Positions 1 to 5,339 of a stretch of DNA of 5,339 bases are shown here, in pieces. The stretch covers positions 1 to 5,339 of the forward strand of contig JADGIF010000670.1 in the NCBI GenBank assembly GCA_018985225.1. The letters run 5' to 3'. Source of the DNA: Amoeboradix gromovi X-113. Lineage: Eukaryota > Fungi > Sanchytriomycota. Both the position numbers and the translations under genes were made by a program. A model generated the notes under the pieces. It worked only from the letters and a program-made list of their open reading frames with translations, did not search any database and was not told the origin of the DNA. How positions within the stretch are numbered: position 1 is the stretch's first letter; every line of letters starts with the position of its first letter.

Positions 1-180
1 ACCTTTTGCTTAGATGCTCAAAGACCTCATATATTTGAAAGAGATGTAGGGTCTTCTAGTTTTATTTTGAAAAGAGGAATACAATCAATGAAAGAAAATT
101 GGTATAATAGAAGAAGATCTTTTATTAATTATAGCATTTCCTCCGTATGGAGCACCTCCTTTAAAAACGAGTTAGTCTAG
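1..180 (+). CDS. Partial CDS (C-terminal 59 aa, 5' end outside the window) of a putative Fanzor/TnpB-like RuvC nuclease
   Basis: Frame +1 is open from base 1 to TAG at 178-180: TFCLDAQRPHIFERDVGSSSFILKRGIQSMKENWYNRRRSFINYSISSVWSTSFKNELV*. The paralogous copy at 1777-1800 (-) reads NLIGCTFC, supplying a CxxC. CxxC-x10-RDVGSSSFILKRG resembles the TnpB/Fanzor zinc ribbon plus RuvC-III pattern CxxC...RDxNAAxNIxxxG, although it is divergent. The frame lies at the end of a TIR element. Confidence 0.6.
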   Translation, partial: TFCLDAQRPHIFERDVGSSSFILKRGIQSMKENWYNRRRSFINYSISSVWSTSFKNELV

Positions 181-199
181 TTTTTATATTTGGTGTCCC
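1..199 (+). mobile_element. Right (3') end of TIR DNA transposon, copy 1, truncated by the window start
   Basis: 1-199 aligns as an inverted homolog of 1621-1785. It ends in the TIR AGTTAGTCTAGTTTTTATATTTGGTGTCCC (170-199), followed by AT. Confidence 0.9.
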
Positions 200-220
200 A
201 TATTTCCCATTTCATTGTGA
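141..220 (+). ncRNA. Candidate omegaRNA 3' part (scaffold in the transposon right end, guide from the flank at ~200-220); boundaries uncertain
   Basis: Predicted pairings: GCACC 152-156 with GGTGT 192-196, TAAAAAC 162-168 with GTTTTTA 180-186, and CTCC/GGAG 141-152. All are retained in copy 2. The location matches known TnpB/Fanzor omegaRNAs. There is no expression evidence. Confidence 0.4.
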
Positions 221-249: not shown

Positions 250-1620
250 TTAAAGCGAGAGGAACCGATGAACCTGTTTTAAATCTTCATTCCAAATCGA
301 TATATAAATTTTGATGTGCAACTTCAGAAAATGTCCCAACTCTAAGTCGGAGGACTTCCTGGAAAGAGTCAGTCCATAACATGTCATCAAGCCTTTTTCA
401 ATGTAAAAATGCACTGGCAATCTCTCAACCGGCAATCATTTTCATATTCTGTCTTGATGTTTGTAATGTTTTTTTAGTACTCGACTACCATCTTTTTTGT
501 CTTTTGCAATATCTCTTTTTGTCTGGTTTTTTCGTATCTATGTTGCGTTAGGCATGCTGAGCTAAAAATAATGGGTAGCCTAGTGTGGGTTCTAGATGTT
601 CCTCCTACTTGGGAATGTGGACAGTTTGTCAGAATGGGTCTCATTTATTTATTAACTGTTGAAGCATACATTGCACCTAGCTTATATGCGACGATCTGAA
701 ATAAGTCAGAATCACATTTCTCAAGTGTACACAACTTGAGTTCAATATCAAAAATATTGTAGGATTGAAAATAATTAAAAGGGCAATTTTACATGTCAAA
801 TCCTCCCAAATGTCTTGGTACTGAACTCATAAACTTTTCAAGTGTGAACTTAATTGTACCTGTGTGAAAAGTGTTTATTAAAATAACTTGAATTCAAGCA
901 ACGAATAGCATGATGGCTGCTTAAAGGTATTCACTTCATAGTACTCGCAAATCTTTGGTTTTTGTTCGTTGTATAATATAAATCAAAAAGATCACATTGC
1001 CCAGTGTTGGTACACAATTCATAAAAAGAAATGCAATAAAATAATCTATATCTAGTCAAATTACAGTACCATATATAGTTGTTACTGCTATTCGACAATA
1101 TATATCTGGATTCATTGTTAATCTTGAACTCTTGCAAATAGGATCTCTATGATACCGTTTTCCATTTTTATAGGATGAAGTCCTTTTCCCTCATCCAAAG
1201 GAAATCCTATGTAGTCATTTAAATCAAACGTCGAACAAATTTCTCTTCTTTTGTTTCTTTTGCCCATAACGTTAATGTTTCTTCTTTGTTCAATCCATAA
1301 TCCTCTACGTTGGAAGTAAATTTAGCTAAGGAAAAAAGAACTCTCCTTTAGTTTCGATCCATTGAAGCTTCTTATCAGAAAATAGGATTTTAACTCTTTC
1401 ATCTTCACTTAAAAATCTAGAATTTTTGGTGCATTCGTGTGGTTGTAGCTGCGACATAGCACTTTTGCTGACTATTTTTGATGTATTGCTATTTTGCAAA
1501 TAGGATCATGCTATCAAAGAAGCCATATCCAAGAACCATATTTGAGCTTGTTACTCCAGAAAAGAATTACATTGGCAGTGCTCAGAGCATATCTTTCGGC
1601 TCAGTAACCCAACATCTAAT
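250..1620 (-). pseudogene. Decayed coding sequence, possibly an endogenous viral RdRp/L-protein fragment
   Basis: The minus frame 893..390 has only 3 stops in 168 codons, against roughly 12 expected at this AT content, and includes FMSSVPRHLGGFDM. Other broken frames lie upstream and appear to continue beyond the inserted element to ~1991. The identity is tentative. Confidence 0.4.
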
Positions 1621-1893
1621 GAGACACCAAATATAAAAACTAGACCAAGTCGTCTTTAAAGGAGGTGCTCCATAAGGAGCAAATACTACTATTAATAAAA
1701 GTCCTTCTTTCAAACTAGTTTTCTTTCATTAATGTCATTCCCCTCTTTAAAGTATATAGGGTCTTTGAGTGTCTAAGCAAAAGGTGCAACCAATAAGATT
1801 AATTTAATTTAATTTACTATCGGTTAATACACACTGTAAATAATGATTCAAACCATTTTAGAAAGTTAGTCTAGTTTTTATATTTGATGTCCC
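1621..1893 (-). mobile_element. Complete 273-bp non-autonomous (MITE-like) copy 2 of the TIR element
   Basis: TIRs at 1621-1650 (GAGACACCAAATATAAAAACTAGACCAAGT) and 1864-1893 (reverse complement GGGACATCAAATATAAAAACTAGACTAACT) match at 26/30. AT lies on both sides (1619-1620, 1894-1895). 1621-1785 is homologous to 1-199, and 1817-1893 is homologous to 5263-5339. Confidence 0.92.
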
Positions 1894-2029
1894 ATATGTT
1901 TACGAAGCATAACCTAAAGGAGTTGGATGAGTTTGTTACAAAAATTAGAATAGACAAAGTGGTTAGAATGCCACCTTAAGCAATTACTTGTTTAGAAACC
2001 TCAATGATGCAAAATAAACATAATTATAT

Positions 2030-2548
2030 TTATTCCCTGTATTCATACTTCTTGCGCAAAACTCCTACAAGCTCTTCTCTTTCTTTGCCAGTGTTCTTTG
2101 ATCTTGATCGTGGTGAAGGTTCATCACTAGATCTGCTTGAGCTTCTACCAGACCGAGTGGACTTGCTGTCAGGACTTTTAGATTTGGATCGTGCTGATCG
2201 ACTAGAAGCAACACGAGCAGAGCTGCTTTTGCTAGAGCCAGACCTACTTTTTTCGTCAGATCTACTTCGCGGGGACGATTCGTCCTTTCTGCGATGCCTT
2301 CTCTTTCTTCGATCATCTGATCTAGAACCGGAGCTAGAGCTGCTTAATTCGTCATCCCGTGCCTTCTTTTTAAGAAATGCAGGTGACTCTCCATGCTTTT
2401 CCTTGTAATATTGCTCAAGCGCTCCATCTACCTCCGCTTCGTTGTCGTTTTTGTGCCAATAGTCATTTACTGACTTTGTAACAGATAGTTGCAGTTGTTG
2501 AAATTGATCGGTGACACCGCCTGCCCATTCACTCCAAGTTGCTGCCAT
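2030..2548 (-). CDS. 172-aa protein with an Mso1-like Sec1-binding N-terminal region and an S/R/K-rich low-complexity tail
   Basis: Intact ATG..TAA ORF with higher GC than its flanks. NDNEAEVDGALEQYYKEKHGESPAFL resembles the fungal Mso1 motif (D..ED..V...L..YY..KG...P.WL) as recalled from memory. The small size and disordered tail fit. The CDS is well supported; the product is less certain. Confidence 0.6.
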   Translation of the reverse strand: MAATWSEWAGGVTDQFQQLQLSVTKSVNDYWHKNDNEAEVDGALEQYYKEKHGESPAFLKKKARDDELSSSSSGSRSDDRRKRRHRRKDESSPRSRSDEKSRSGSSKSSSARVASSRSARSKSKSPDSKSTRSGRSSSRSSDEPSPRSRSKNTGKEREELVGVLRKKYEYRE

Positions 2549-2712
2549 GAGAAAAATAACTTAAAATTCATTTAACAAAAAATAAATGTTACTGATTGGT
2601 TCTAACCAAATTAAAATCCTTGACAAATTTTGTGACCCAATTATCTTAGTTCTAATAAATGAGACAGAATATAAGCTATACAAGTCAAAAATCCAATAAT
2701 TCTCTGGTAGAT

Positions 2713-2733
2713 TAGACATCAAATATAAAAACT
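2713..2733 (+). repeat. Solo, truncated left-type TIR fragment
   Basis: GACATCAAATATAAAAACT (2715-2733) is a 19/19 match to the TIRs at 5265-5283 and 1873-1891 (reverse complement). AT precedes it at 2711-2712. Confidence 0.8.
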
Positions 2734-3149
2734 GCGTCTAGTGACTGAATCAATATGTCTCACAAGACTAAATATAACTAATTTTACACTTTTTACTAAA
2801 TAGGAAAGCTGTTTCAGCTTTCATTGGAACATTTGCAAGTACAATAGCGCTCACTCTCATAATGGTCTTATAATACGCCAGAGCACAGTATATGATGTAT
2901 TCGTGGATATATGTGTGAATGCATAATGCAAAAGCTACAAGTTATTGAAATCCTTATAACAAATCGCAAAATATCCGGGTGGCAGAAAGGAATGATAAAA
3001 AAAACAGTTTTTGGGAGATAAAATTGGAAACTATGTATAAGTTGGTTATCCCAGTACTACAATAGGTATCCCAAATGTAAAATCAAAGAGAACAGTTATC
3101 ATGGTGGAATAATTAAGAGCCCACAGTTTTCACTAAACTCCTCGCTACA

Positions 3150-4259
3150 ATGATGGGAAAATGCAATCATGTGGATTGTACACGAATGGCTTCTCAAAAT
3201 GTAGACTATTGCGGTAGCCATATACCTCATCATTATGAAAGTCATAGCAAGTTTAAGTGTGAGCTATGTGATACATTTATCACCATATCTAAAATTAAAA
3301 AGCATAAATTTGTGTGTCCTTGCCGCCCTAAAGTGCTAGACTACGTGGTTAAGAATGCTAACCTAATTGCTAAAGATCCAATTAATTCCATAGAAATAGA
3401 TTTACCCGATCTGTTTTGTTTATTTGAAGACGAAGTTCCTACTTTGCCAGCTTTTGATGTTAATTTAAATTCAAAATTGTTTAAATCGAACATCCAGGAA
3501 TATATTTTGTCCCGTATACTGAAAAAGTATGTAGATGAAGCCAATTTAGAGTCATTTGGAGTTATCGATTTTGGTTCTGGTAAAGCGGAATTCCTGCATC
3601 ATATTCGTATGTCTTTTAAAGATTTCCAAAACATAACTTACATCGCAGTAGATAAAAGAAGTTTTAAATTTAAATTTGATCGCAAGTTCAAATTTAATAA
3701 TCTGAAGCAGGAAGCCTGTGAGCTTGAAAGTTGTAAATTTAAAAGATTACACTGCGATTTGCAAGATCTGTGCATAGATAATGTTCTAGAGCTAAATGGG
3801 ATGGATTTAGTTGGGACTTGCAAGCATTTGTGCGGCAGTGCAACAGATTTGGGCATTAACTGCTTGATAAAGCAAAAAAGTAAGCTCTTTTTGTTCGCGC
3901 CTTGTTGCCATCATAGAATAAGTAACATGTTGTTGTACGACCCATTAGACTTACCTTTTCATAAGCTAGAGCGCTTTAGATTGCAGTTTGGTAAAAAATA
4001 CAAATTATCAGCAAATCCAAATGAAATGTTCGGACAGATATTAGCGAGTATTGCCAAGCTATCAAGCTGGGCCACTATAAAATCAAATCCTGAGAGTGCT
4101 GAAAGAATTAGAATTGGACGACGAGCCAAATTCTTTTTTGATGAATTGAGAGGCAAATATTGTGAAAGAAAGGGTTACGATGTAGTGCACGCCATTTATT
4201 GCAGTGAGTCAATTACCCCCGAGAATAGGATTATGGTTTGTGTTGCGAAATTGATCTAA
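3150..4259 (+). CDS. TRM13: tRNA:m(4)X 2'-O-methyltransferase Trm13
   Basis: 369-aa intronless ORF. It has an N-terminal CCCH finger (CNHVDC...YCGSH), a second zinc knuckle (CELC...KKHKFVC), a SAM-binding motif (IDFGSGKAEF), the signature KHLCGSATD and PCCHH motifs, IGRRAKFFFDELR, and C-terminal YCSESITPEN. Confidence 0.93.
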   Translation: MMGKCNHVDCTRMASQNVDYCGSHIPHHYESHSKFKCELCDTFITISKIKKHKFVCPCRPKVLDYVVKNANLIAKDPINSIEIDLPDLFCLFEDEVPTLPAFDVNLNSKLFKSNIQEYILSRILKKYVDEANLESFGVIDFGSGKAEFLHHIRMSFKDFQNITYIAVDKRSFKFKFDRKFKFNNLKQEACELESCKFKRLHCDLQDLCIDNVLELNGMDLVGTCKHLCGSATDLGINCLIKQKSKLFLFAPCCHHRISNMLLYDPLDLPFHKLERFRLQFGKKYKLSANPNEMFGQILASIAKLSSWATIKSNPESAERIRIGRRAKFFFDELRGKYCERKGYDVVHAIYCSESITPENRIMVCVAKLI

Positions 4260-5262
4260 ATTGATAAAACCTTATAGCCGGTGCAATAATTAGATTATTA
4301 TTTACTTCATTTGAAATAAATCAATGTTTTTAGTCTTATGAAATCAATTACAAAGAAATTATGTTTTAGCTTTAATATCTAAAATCTCACGTGTTCGCGC
4401 AACTAATATATGAAGTTCTTTAATATCTCTAACAAGCTTGGCATTTTAACTTTCAACAAACTGGGTTGACACAATTTTAGTCTGCTCCTACTTACAGAAT
4501 TCTTACCACCAGGATTGATGTCTCGATGACCCTGATGGTGACGTGGAACAGGTCTCATCAAGAGTCCTGATCTCGTAAAATCAAGTGTTTTCACAGAAAA
4601 ACTATGGCAATCGCTCAGTTGCAATGAAAGCGTGAGAAGTTACTTTTTTATGCTAGGTTGAATATGGATGCATACATCTTAATTATATGGTCTCTATACA
4701 TTTCTAAAAGCCTAGTAAGATGGTATGTTGGTGCGATACGACCTGCGTGACTACGGTATATCTTTTAACAACTAAATTGACAGTTGCTGCTGCAATATTA
4801 TCCCACAGTAATCGTTCAATAACAATTTTGTGAGAAATTTACAAAAATTTCTTTGTCATCTCATGTCCAATGGGACTTTTTGCCAATGTTTTCACTAACT
4901 TGTCGGGTATGCTTAGCAAGCCCGTTTTAAGGAAAAACTTGAAGTTGAACTCCGTCTAGTAGCAGAAAAATGAGAAAACGAGAAAATTTAAGTGAAATTA
5001 TAAACATGAGAAAATGTAAGACTTTCACGAAGAGCTTATATGGCCAGCAGAATTTACATGCGCTCTTAATATATTCATCAGGGTTAGTGATTAATTACAT
5101 TTATGCTACCAGATGGTAAACAATTTAAGATTTCAATTTAACTAAAGACTTTCCCGATGGCGTCACTGTTTTTGCAAACAGTTTAGATGGCACAAAACCT
5201 GATATTCTTTCTTTTTATCTATTGAAATTGGTCCAGTTCTAAAATAGACATTTAATACAAAA

Positions 5263-5339
5263 GGGACATCAAATATAAAAACTTGACCAACTTTCTGTAA
5301 CAACTTGGAACATTATTTAAGAGGCGAGTGGACATTCAG
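5263..5339 (+). mobile_element. Left (5') end of TIR element copy 3, truncated by the window end
   Basis: GGGACATCAAATATAAAAACTTGACCAACTTTCT matches the copy-2 left end (1893 downward) at 32/34. Ungapped similarity continues through CATTATTTA. The 5' flank is AA rather than AT. Confidence 0.88.

What the first reader, a model, noticed from the sequence alone, without database searches (positions are those of the whole stretch)
1..199. Divergent Fanzor/TnpB-like nuclease whose ORF runs into the TIR of a eukaryotic DNA transposon
Seen: an open frame of 59 codons, missing from the ORF track, stops inside the TIR. Copy 2 supplies the upstream GCTFC and retains the tail frame with mostly conservative changes (SFINYSISSVWSTSFKNELV* versus TFINSSICSLWSTSFKDDLV*), suggesting past protein-level constraint. 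Known: TnpB/Fanzor proteins end in a CxxC zinc ribbon followed by the RuvC-III RDxNAAxNI motif, close to the element's right end. Inference: this is a eukaryotic RNA-guided nuclease with an atypical RDVGSSSFI motif that keeps the Asp but loses both Asn residues, possibly an undescribed Fanzor lineage.
Basis: partly seen in the sequence, partly recalled or inferred. Interest (0 to 1): 0.9.

Follow-up and report, generated by a model that had tools for sequence, protein, structure and literature searches.

The report
Fanzor gene tail inside a mini-transposon
The 59-codon frame is a real leftover of the end of a Fanzor1 RNA-guided nuclease gene, but it sits in the right end of a cut-down, roughly 800-copy mini-transposon of the fungus Amoeboradix gromovi and is not a working nuclease gene here.

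Summary
Window 1-177 is an open frame of 59 codons, and its TAG stop (178-180) lies inside a 30-nt terminal inverted repeat (170-199).

The frame is homologous to the C-terminus of a Fanzor1 lineage: the second CxxC of the zinc ribbon, then RuvC-III. Longer relics and paralogues in the same genome, and intact 585-642-aa relatives elsewhere, carry IDPG (RuvC-I), E-x6-CxxC (RuvC-II), a C4 ribbon and the same unusual ERD-x-[GA]-S-[SA]-x-[FY]-I motif. A profile of the lineage matches solved Guillardia theta Fanzor1 at E = 1.9e-6.

This locus is not a nuclease gene. The window is a whole contig that starts inside the repeat. The repeat's ends occur about 1,600 times in the 10.5-Mb genome. Twenty of 21 complete elements are 283-726 bp and lack RuvC-I, and most also lack RuvC-II. 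They have 4-bp A/T-rich target duplications, like Sola2-type Fanzor elements. Copies decay almost neutrally.

No fully assembled intact gene of this lineage was found. One 436-aa uninterrupted paralogue is cut by a contig start.

A possible guide-RNA role for the retained end is untested, because no RNA data exist. The scan had already described this family on other DNA of this genome (s1-537450, s1-544941).

The parts
1..177 (+). Open 59-codon relic of a Fanzor1 C-terminus: the end of the second CxxC (T-F-C, nt 1-9), RuvC-III Arg-Asp (nt 40-45) followed by VGSSSFILKRG, then a poorly conserved tail. It is cut at its 5' side by the contig start.
178..180 (+). TAG stop codon inside the right TIR. 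L089 uses the same stop position; L073 uses the neighbouring TAG of the TIR in another frame.
170..199 (+). Right terminal inverted repeat. It diverges 1.7% among copies, against 5-7% for the rest of the tail.
200..203 (+). ATAT flank at the position of the 4-bp A/T-rich target-site duplication. The left end of this copy lies off the contig, so the duplication cannot be checked here.
145..203 (+). Predicted RNA stem. 145-150 pairs with 198-203, 152-156 with 192-196 and 162-168 with 180-186. It joins the subterminal TATGGAGCACC box to the TIR tip and the four flank bases. It is a candidate omega/right-end RNA scaffold end and is untested.
1619..1897 (-). Copy 2: a complete 279-bp mini-element of the same family, in reverse orientation, with both TIRs. 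Its RD codons were removed by a 31-nt deletion.
5260..5339 (+). Left end (TIR plus subterminal sequence) of a third element of the family, cut by the contig end.
2710..2740 (-). Degenerate solo TIR-like sequence (74% to the reference arm, with a 19-nt exact core).

Best explanation
Window 1-201 is the right end of a non-autonomous, internally deleted derivative (MITE-like mini-element) of a small TIR transposon whose only gene was a Fanzor1 RNA-guided nuclease. The full form, seen intact in another organism, is about 2.07 kb: a TIR, a 642-aa Fanzor1 ORF, and a second TIR that contains the stop codon. In A. gromovi, deletions removed most of the gene. They kept about 220 bp of the left end and about 250 bp of the right end, so the last 60-100 codons (zinc ribbon, RuvC-III, tail) travel with the TIR. 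These mini-elements amplified to roughly 800 copies, making 4-bp A/T-rich target duplications typical of Sola2-type Fanzor elements. They were presumably moved by a transposase supplied in trans (inferred; not identified). The frame stays open in many copies because they are young (94-100% identical), not because the peptide is used. The retained end is needed in cis for transposition. It may also still encode the guide-RNA scaffold, which in Fanzor1 elements overlaps the ORF end, the TIR and the target duplication (inferred from published systems).
For: Copy number: 836+790 TIR matches against 0 in the control; 911 first-look candidates for the 201-nt end. Structure: alignment of internal copies. 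21 complete elements measure 283-726 bp, plus one of 1660 bp. Perfect 4-bp duplications occur in 9 of 21, against 1.7 expected (P<1e-5). Descent from Fanzor1: relic L052 has a 291-aa open piece with LIGIDPGVK ... VDEYHTSKMCSVC ... CTFC. Paralogue L073 has a 436-aa uninterrupted frame with IDPG, NESYTSKHCSVC and FERDVGSSSFILKRG, and stops in the same TIR. L089 is an intact 642-aa homologue between the same kind of TIRs. Pfam TNB domain scores E=3.6e-5 and 4e-4. The lineage profile hits G. theta Fanzor1 (PDB 9cer) at E=1.9e-6. Decay: 19 of 49 copies have frame-breaking indels; substitutions by codon position are 168/139/186; pN/pS is 0.53. RNA: the fold of 60-215 has z=-4.2. Published parallels: PMC3627910 (single-ORF Fanzor TIR elements; Sola2 elements with AWWT duplications) and PMC10711439 (the Fanzor1 right-end RNA includes the TIR and the target duplication).
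Against: The left part of this particular copy is off the contig, so its length is unknown. pN/pS of 0.53 is below 1, though this may come from transition bias or from differences inherited from once-functional masters. Twelve of 21 elements lack a matching duplication. No transposase with these TIRs was found: the Sola-like genes on C556 and C367 are not flanked by them. No RNA data exist. The structure model was too poor to use (pLDDT 49.6).
Confidence: 0.85

Rival explanations
1. The window copy is the 3' end of a full-length, possibly active Fanzor1 gene that the assembler cut at the contig start.
For: The frame is open to the first base of the contig. Several long-form fragments at contig ends are open with no stops: C189, C363, C540, C173, C290, C746 and C400. 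An intact master could therefore exist but be fragmented in the assembly.
Against: About 800 elements share this end, but only about 10 places carry the long-form RuvC-I to RuvC-II segment at 76% identity or more. Twenty of 21 complete elements are mini-elements. No diagnostic difference links the window tail to the long form.
Confidence: 0.05
2. The mini-elements are functional 'ghost' guide-RNA loci. Each right end is transcribed into an omega-type RNA whose guide is the flanking DNA, and a Fanzor1 supplied in trans (L073-like) uses these RNAs, for example to cut empty sites and favour retention of the mini-elements.
For: The retained region is where Fanzor1 right-end RNAs are encoded (PMC10711439). 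The predicted stem joins a subterminal box conserved even in L089 to the TIR tip and the duplicated bases, with z=-4.2. A paralogue with an uninterrupted frame and all catalytic motifs exists.
Against: Only 2 of 18 predicted pairs show compensatory change, and TIR conservation is explained by transposition alone. No RNA run holds the stretch. The paralogue is only 62% identical and its N-terminus is unassembled. Copy 2 and others carry deletions in the putative scaffold.
Confidence: 0.2
3. The frame is a chance open frame in AT-rich repeat DNA, or belongs to a DDE transposase or an unrelated zinc-finger protein.
For: The 59-aa peptite alone gives no Pfam hit.
Against: The same frame continues into the DEYHTSK-CxxC and IDPG motifs in longer copies. 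The profile hits Fanzor1 and a Cas12 protein (UnCas12m4a, weaker at E=0.004), not a transposase.
Confidence: 0.01

Closest known systems
Sola2-type Fanzor1 elements DFa-1/2/3 and PPa-1/4/5 of dictyostelids (Bao & Jurka 2013, PMC3627910)
   Same: Fanzor1 is encoded at the 3' side of a TIR element. They make 4-bp A/T-rich target duplications (AWWT; ATAT, AAAT, ATTT), as seen here in 9 of 21 elements. Derivatives with the transposase deleted exist.
   Different: Their TIRs are 12-21 bp; here they are about 30 bp. Some of theirs carry a Sola2 transposase; here no transposase with these TIRs was found. Here the main product is a mini-element of about 470 bp at about 800 copies.
SPu-1 of Spizellomyces punctatus, the prototype Fanzor1 element (PMC3627910)
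   Same: It is a single-ORF element of about 2.1 kb with 33-bp TIRs in a zoosporic fungus. L089 has the same design: 2.07 kb and a 642-aa ORF.
   Different: Its putative duplications are TA, not 4 bp. No sequence match to any solved Fanzor other than GtFz1 was obtained. The RuvC-III motif differs.
Guillardia theta Fanzor1 (PDB 9cer/9ces/9cet)
   Same: It is the best solved relative, at profile E=1.9e-6 over RuvC-I to RuvC-III. It shares DPG, WGN-G, E-x-YTS-x-C-x-x-C, the second zinc knuckle and the I-L-x-R end.
   Different: Identity is low. GtFz1 is much longer. In GtFz1 the aligned RuvC-III stretch reads NRNVAGAFNI, where this lineage reads ERDVGSSSFI.
SfAV Fanzor1 non-autonomous element and its right-end RNA (Yoon et al. 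2023, PMC10711439)
   Same: It is a TIR element encoding only Fanzor1, moved in trans. Its guide-RNA scaffold includes the TIR and the target duplication, as the fold predicted here would.
   Different: It has two copies in a virus genome and its RNA was shown experimentally. Here there are hundreds of gene-less copies and no RNA evidence.
Bacterial miniature derivatives of IS200/IS605 elements (PATEs); from my own knowledge, not checked here
   Same: They are short non-autonomous derivatives of TnpB-type elements that keep the ends.
   Different: They are prokaryotic, move as single-stranded DNA, and have no TIRs or target duplications.

Membership tests
Fanzor1 (TnpB superfamily), tested on the lineage | RuvC-I with a DPG motif (Yoon et al. 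2023) | tested here: met
   IGIDPGVK in L052 and L073; YGCDPGVK or YGVDPGVK in P0003-P0005
Fanzor1 (TnpB superfamily), tested on the lineage | Alternative RuvC-II glutamate six residues before the first CxxC; [TS][TS]xx-C4 zinc finger-x(5,50)-RD (Bao & Jurka 2013) | tested here: met
   VD-E-YHTSKM-CSVC, 26 residues, CTFC, 11 residues, D. The spacers are longer than the 12-18 and 4-8 of the Yoon regular expression.
Fanzor1 (TnpB superfamily), tested on the lineage | Significant similarity to a characterised Fanzor1 | tested here: met
   Profile A1 against G. theta Fanzor1 gives E=1.9e-6. The Pfam TNB domain scores 24.3 bits, just under the 26.3 cut-off. A single-sequence search of the PDB found nothing.
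Fanzor1 (TnpB superfamily), tested on the lineage | [ST]DG motif in the WED domain, said to be characteristic of Fanzor1 (PMC10711439) | tested here: inconclusive
   A conserved SDGYS/TDGYS box lies upstream of RuvC-I, but its structural position could not be checked because the model pLDDT is 49.6.
Fanzor1 gene, tested at the window locus itself | Complete ORF with RuvC-I, RuvC-II, zinc ribbon and RuvC-III | tested here: not met
   Only the last Cys pair (partly), the RD and the tail are on the contig. Complete elements with this end are mostly 283-726 bp.
Fanzor1 system | Guide (omega/right-end) RNA from the 3' end, and RNA-guided DNA cleavage | not testable with these tools
   There is only a fold prediction (z=-4.2). 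No RNA runs exist.
MITE-like non-autonomous TIR element | TIRs, small size, no transposase, high copy number | tested here: met
   The size of the window's own copy cannot be tested because the contig starts inside it.
Sola2-type transposon | 4-bp A/T-rich (AWWT) target-site duplication | tested here: met
   9 of 21 are perfect (ATTA, AAAT, AAGT, ATTT, ATAT, ATAG) against 1.7 expected, P<1e-5. Twelve of 21 do not match.
Sola2-type transposon | A Sola DDD transposase bounded by the same TIRs | tested here: inconclusive
   At least 57 Sola-like matches exist in the genome, but the two copies read (C556, C367) are not flanked by these TIRs.
   Pfam and PDB searches give only TnpB/Fanzor/Cas12-type matches.

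The most novel reading that the evidence does not exclude
The roughly 800 mini-elements form a dispersed library of guide-RNA genes. Each would be transcribed from the retained Fanzor tail and TIR, with the neighbouring host DNA as guide, and would be used in trans by a surviving Fanzor1 that carries the unusual ERD-x-GSS-x-FI RuvC-III motif. RNA-guided cutting of empty sites would then help a gene-less eukaryotic MITE family to persist or spread. A side possibility is that the 125-138-aa in-frame fusion ORFs of some copies (NLS plus zinc ribbon plus RuvC-III; L056, L061, L065) make a mini-protein that competes for that RNA.
Probability: 0.2. Interest if true: 0.75.

Novelty: new member of a known kind. 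Interest (0 to 1): 0.4.

Why it matters
Fanzors are the eukaryotic relatives of Cas12 and TnpB and are of interest for genome editing. This lineage is rare in public data and has a RuvC-III motif without the usual Asn residues. It occurs in an early-diverging fungus and in giant-virus-like metagenome contigs. Its gene-less derivatives make up an estimated 3-4% of a 10.5-Mb genome. That gives a natural system in which to ask whether guide-RNA-bearing transposon ends can succeed without their nuclease gene. For annotation, it also warns that hundreds of short open frames in this genome are relics, not genes.

Tried and rejected
1. Pfam on the 59-aa peptide alone gave no hit.
2. An exact TIR pattern search in viral contigs gave no hit.
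3. My first hand translation of the upstream frame put a stop 16 codons upstream. That was wrong and was corrected by script.
4. A Pfam OrfB_IS605 search of the genome found only the other (IS607-like) family.
5. I took a TIR pair on C154 for a long element. It encloses a Schlafen AlbA_2 gene on the opposite strand with no Fanzor.
6. A single-sequence search of the PDB found nothing.
7. The AlphaFold model from an 11-sequence alignment had mean pLDDT 49.6, so no fold search was run.
8. The giant-virus-like contig carrying P0003 has no TIRs like these. The intact copy with the same right TIR is L089, next to a histone H3 gene end.
9. I looked for the mobilising transposase via homeodomain-fused Sola-like genes. 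No shared TIRs were seen.
10. I considered a TA duplication, no duplication, and an IS607-like dinucleotide crossover. I rejected them in favour of a 4-bp duplication.
11. No RNA run was available. The contigs laid show only that the repeat is very abundant in the source run, and that two soil metagenomes hold 99%-identical copies with other flanks.

Full report
**What is in the window.** The window is an entire 5,339-bp contig (G000:C956) of a 10.5-Mb assembly in 1,319 contigs. Frame 1 of bases 1-180 gives 59 sense codons and then TAG; the other two frames are closed. The ORF list omits this frame because it runs off the contig start. The stop at 178-180 lies inside a 30-nt repeat arm (170-199). 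That arm recurs in the window at 1619-1648(-), 1866-1897(+), 2710-2740(-) and 5260-5292(-).

**The repeat family.**
- The 201-nt end has 911 first-look candidates in the genome. Forty were scored, at 94-100% identity, and many lie at contig ends.
- The 21-nt TIR core occurs 836 times forward and 790 times reverse with up to two mismatches, against 0 for the reversed control. That is roughly 800 elements.
- Copies internal to contigs share a left end, a right end and TIRs of about 30 nt.
- Of 21 complete elements, 20 measure 283-726 bp and one measures 1,660 bp.
- In the window, 1619-1897 is a complete 279-bp copy in reverse orientation. 5260-5339 is the left end of a third copy, cut by the contig end.

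**Target-site duplication.** Nine of the 21 elements have a perfect 4-bp duplication (ATTA, AAAT, AAGT, ATTT, ATAT, ATAG). Shuffled pairings give 1.7 matches on average, so P<1e-5. The left flank also shows AC just outside the duplication in 16-18 of 20 distinct left ends. A/T-rich 4-bp duplications (AWWT) are what Bao & Jurka described for Sola2-type Fanzor1 elements (PMC3627910).

**Is the frame a Fanzor tail? Yes.** In better-preserved copies the same frame continues upstream:
- Some mini-element subfamilies read ...VDEYHTSK(K/M)CSVCENE...(26 residues)...CTFC...(11 residues)...D, followed by VGSSSFILKRG.
- A 1,660-bp relic (L052, contig C33) has a 291-aa open piece with LIGIDPGVK, ILFWGDGQF, VDEYHTSKMCSVC and CTFC.
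- A 62%-identical paralogue on C1157 (L073) has a 436-aa uninterrupted frame, cut by the contig start. It carries IDPG, NESYTSKHCSVC and FERDVGSSSFILKRG, and its stop lies in the same TIR.
- A 34-36%-identical relic on C574 keeps EKDVGSSKYIRKRG.

**Relatives elsewhere.** An exhaustive HMMER search of 1.84 billion representatives with the 291-aa piece found only 19 proteins.
- One is the EukProt Amoeboradix gromovi protein, at 100% identity. This identifies the organism.
- Three are full-length relatives of 585-642 aa. They have an N-terminal basic stretch, DPG, E-x6-CxxC, a second CxxC and ERD-[FG]-[GA]-S-A-x-[FY]-I.
- One of these (P0005, locus L089, from assembly GCA_013565655.1) sits in a 2.07-kb element bounded by TIRs. 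Its right arm is identical over 28 nt to the one in the window, and its ORF ends ...DLV then TAG inside the TIR, as here.
- Two others (P0003, P0023) lie in dense, giant-virus-like metagenome contigs without such TIRs.

**Statistical support.** The Pfam TNB domain scores E=3.6e-5 (24.3 bits, cut-off 26.3) on L052 and 4e-4 on L073. A profile of the lineage hits solved Guillardia theta Fanzor1 (9cer) at E=1.9e-6 from RuvC-I to RuvC-III, and UnCas12m4a more weakly at E=0.004. The lineage meets the published Fanzor definitions. These are DPG, the alternative Glu six residues before the zinc finger (PMC10711439), and the D...[TS][TS]xx-C4-x(5,50)-RD pattern (PMC3627910).

**Why this locus is not a nuclease gene.**
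- Nothing lies upstream on the contig.
- Elements with this end are overwhelmingly mini-elements without RuvC-I.
- In internal copies no more than 138 codons are open.
- Among 49 distinct copies of the 201-nt end, 19 have frame-breaking indels and 5 have new stops. Substitutions fall almost evenly on codon positions (168/139/186).
- pN/pS against the consensus is 0.53, uncorrected for transition bias. I read this as near-neutral decay with some inherited signal.
- The TIR itself diverges much less (1.7% against 5-7%), as expected for a sequence needed in cis. My choice of copies that reach the end adds some bias to that figure.
- Only about 10 places carry the long-form middle segment at 76% identity or more. 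Several of these are open fragments at contig ends, so an intact master may exist unassembled. I give about 5% odds that the window copy is such a long form.

**How it most likely works.**
- Shown: the architecture, the copy number, the duplications, the descent from Fanzor1, and the conservation of an ORF end inside the TIR.
- Inferred: internal deletion of a single-gene Fanzor1 TIR element produced short derivatives. These kept the two ends and were amplified by a transposase acting in trans, probably of Sola type given the duplications.
- The genome has at least 57 Sola-like matches, including a 687-aa ORF with a C-terminal homeodomain. The two copies I could read are not flanked by these TIRs. 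The mobiliser therefore remains unidentified.

**Possible RNA role.** In published Fanzor1 systems the guide (right-end) RNA overlaps the ORF end, and the TIR and target duplication form part of its scaffold (PMC10711439).
- As RNA, window 60-215 folds with z=-4.2, and 0 of 200 shuffles fold as well.
- A stem pairs a subterminal TATGGAGCACC box with the TIR tip and the four flank bases. The TATGG core is invariant even in L089; the rest of the box varies.
- Covariation is thin: 2 of 18 pairs.
- No RNA run holds the stretch.
- The guide-RNA idea is therefore a hypothesis, not a finding.

**Other sequencing runs.** The source run holds over a thousand contigs on the repeat. Two soil metagenomes hold 99%-identical copies with different flanks.

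**Comparison with what is known.** Fanzor1 in non-autonomous TIR elements, Sola association, and single-ORF 2.1-kb elements in a zoosporic fungus are all published (PMC3627910, PMC10530073, PMC10711439). I found no paper linking Fanzor with sanchytrids, or describing a Fanzor-derived MITE swarm. The RuvC-III variant is a lineage feature, not a loss of the catalytic Asp. I class this as a new member of a known kind. Other windows of this genome were already reported by this scan as Fanzor1 'ghost' mini-transposons (s1-537450, s1-544941). My tests agree with them on the main points.

**Limits.** The structure model was unusable.

Noticed in passing
G000 genome-wide; e.g. L031-L039, L044, L048: A second, unrelated swarm of TnpB-type relics reads ...LPSFNTSQM...NESFTSQTCTRCG...CTNCHLEIDRDHMAARNI. 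At least 150 places score over the Pfam TNB cut-off, out of 560 candidates. These relics do not use the window's TIRs.
   Followed up: partly
L040 (G000:C542), 1417-3126 minus strand: An apparently intact 569-aa Fanzor2/IS607-type TnpB homologue (HTH_OrfB plus TNB domains, DRDHLAARNI) lies directly downstream of a serine-recombinase-like ORF fragment.
   Followed up: partly
L083 (G000:C363), 1463-3541 minus strand: A 693-aa uninterrupted Fanzor1 frame of a third lineage has a near-canonical RuvC-III (EDRDVNSCIKI). Pfam TNB scores E=5.9e-8.
   Followed up: partly
L041 (G000:C154), 77-1833: A pair of the family's TIRs, each with a second subterminal TIR-like repeat, encloses a 383-aa Schlafen AlbA_2-domain gene on the opposite strand. 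This is a possible cargo-carrying element or two solo ends. A similar end lies 130 bp downstream of the Sola-like gene on C556 (L107, 4103).
   Followed up: partly
L107 (G000:C556), 1909-3969; L108 (C1105): A 687-aa Sola-like transposase ORF ends in a homeodomain. The genome has at least 57 Sola-like matches in two groups (76-89% and 36-46% identity). On C1105 a mini-element end lies just upstream of a truncated copy.
   Followed up: partly
L089 (GCA_013565655.1, JACCDU010508025.1): The intact 642-aa homologue sits in a 2.07-kb TIR element inserted just after the 3' end of a histone H3-like gene. Its right TIR is nearly identical to that of A. gromovi although the proteins are only about 30-34% identical. 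This suggests horizontal spread or strong constraint on the end. The host organism was not identified.
   Followed up: partly
L056, L061, L065 (G000:C1008, C1195, C952): Some mini-element subfamilies keep open frames of 125-138 codons. In L056 and L065 the frame begins with a start codon and basic N-terminus (MAKRKQKLS...) fused in frame to the zinc ribbon and RuvC-III tail. Whether any is expressed is unknown.
   Followed up: no
window 3150-4259 (+): An intron-less 369-aa gene for a TRM13-type tRNA methyltransferase (Pfam TRM13, E=5.6e-35) has Cys/His-rich N-terminal motifs.
   Followed up: partly
window 2030-2548 (-): A 172-aa ORF has a Ser/Arg/Lys-rich C-terminal half and no Pfam match. Local GC rises to 43% against about 33% elsewhere.
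   Followed up: no
runs X2, X3 (soil metagenomes, 2024): Contigs 99% identical to window 1-201 continue into different flanks. The same or a very close organism, with other insertion sites, is therefore present in soil samples.
   Followed up: partly
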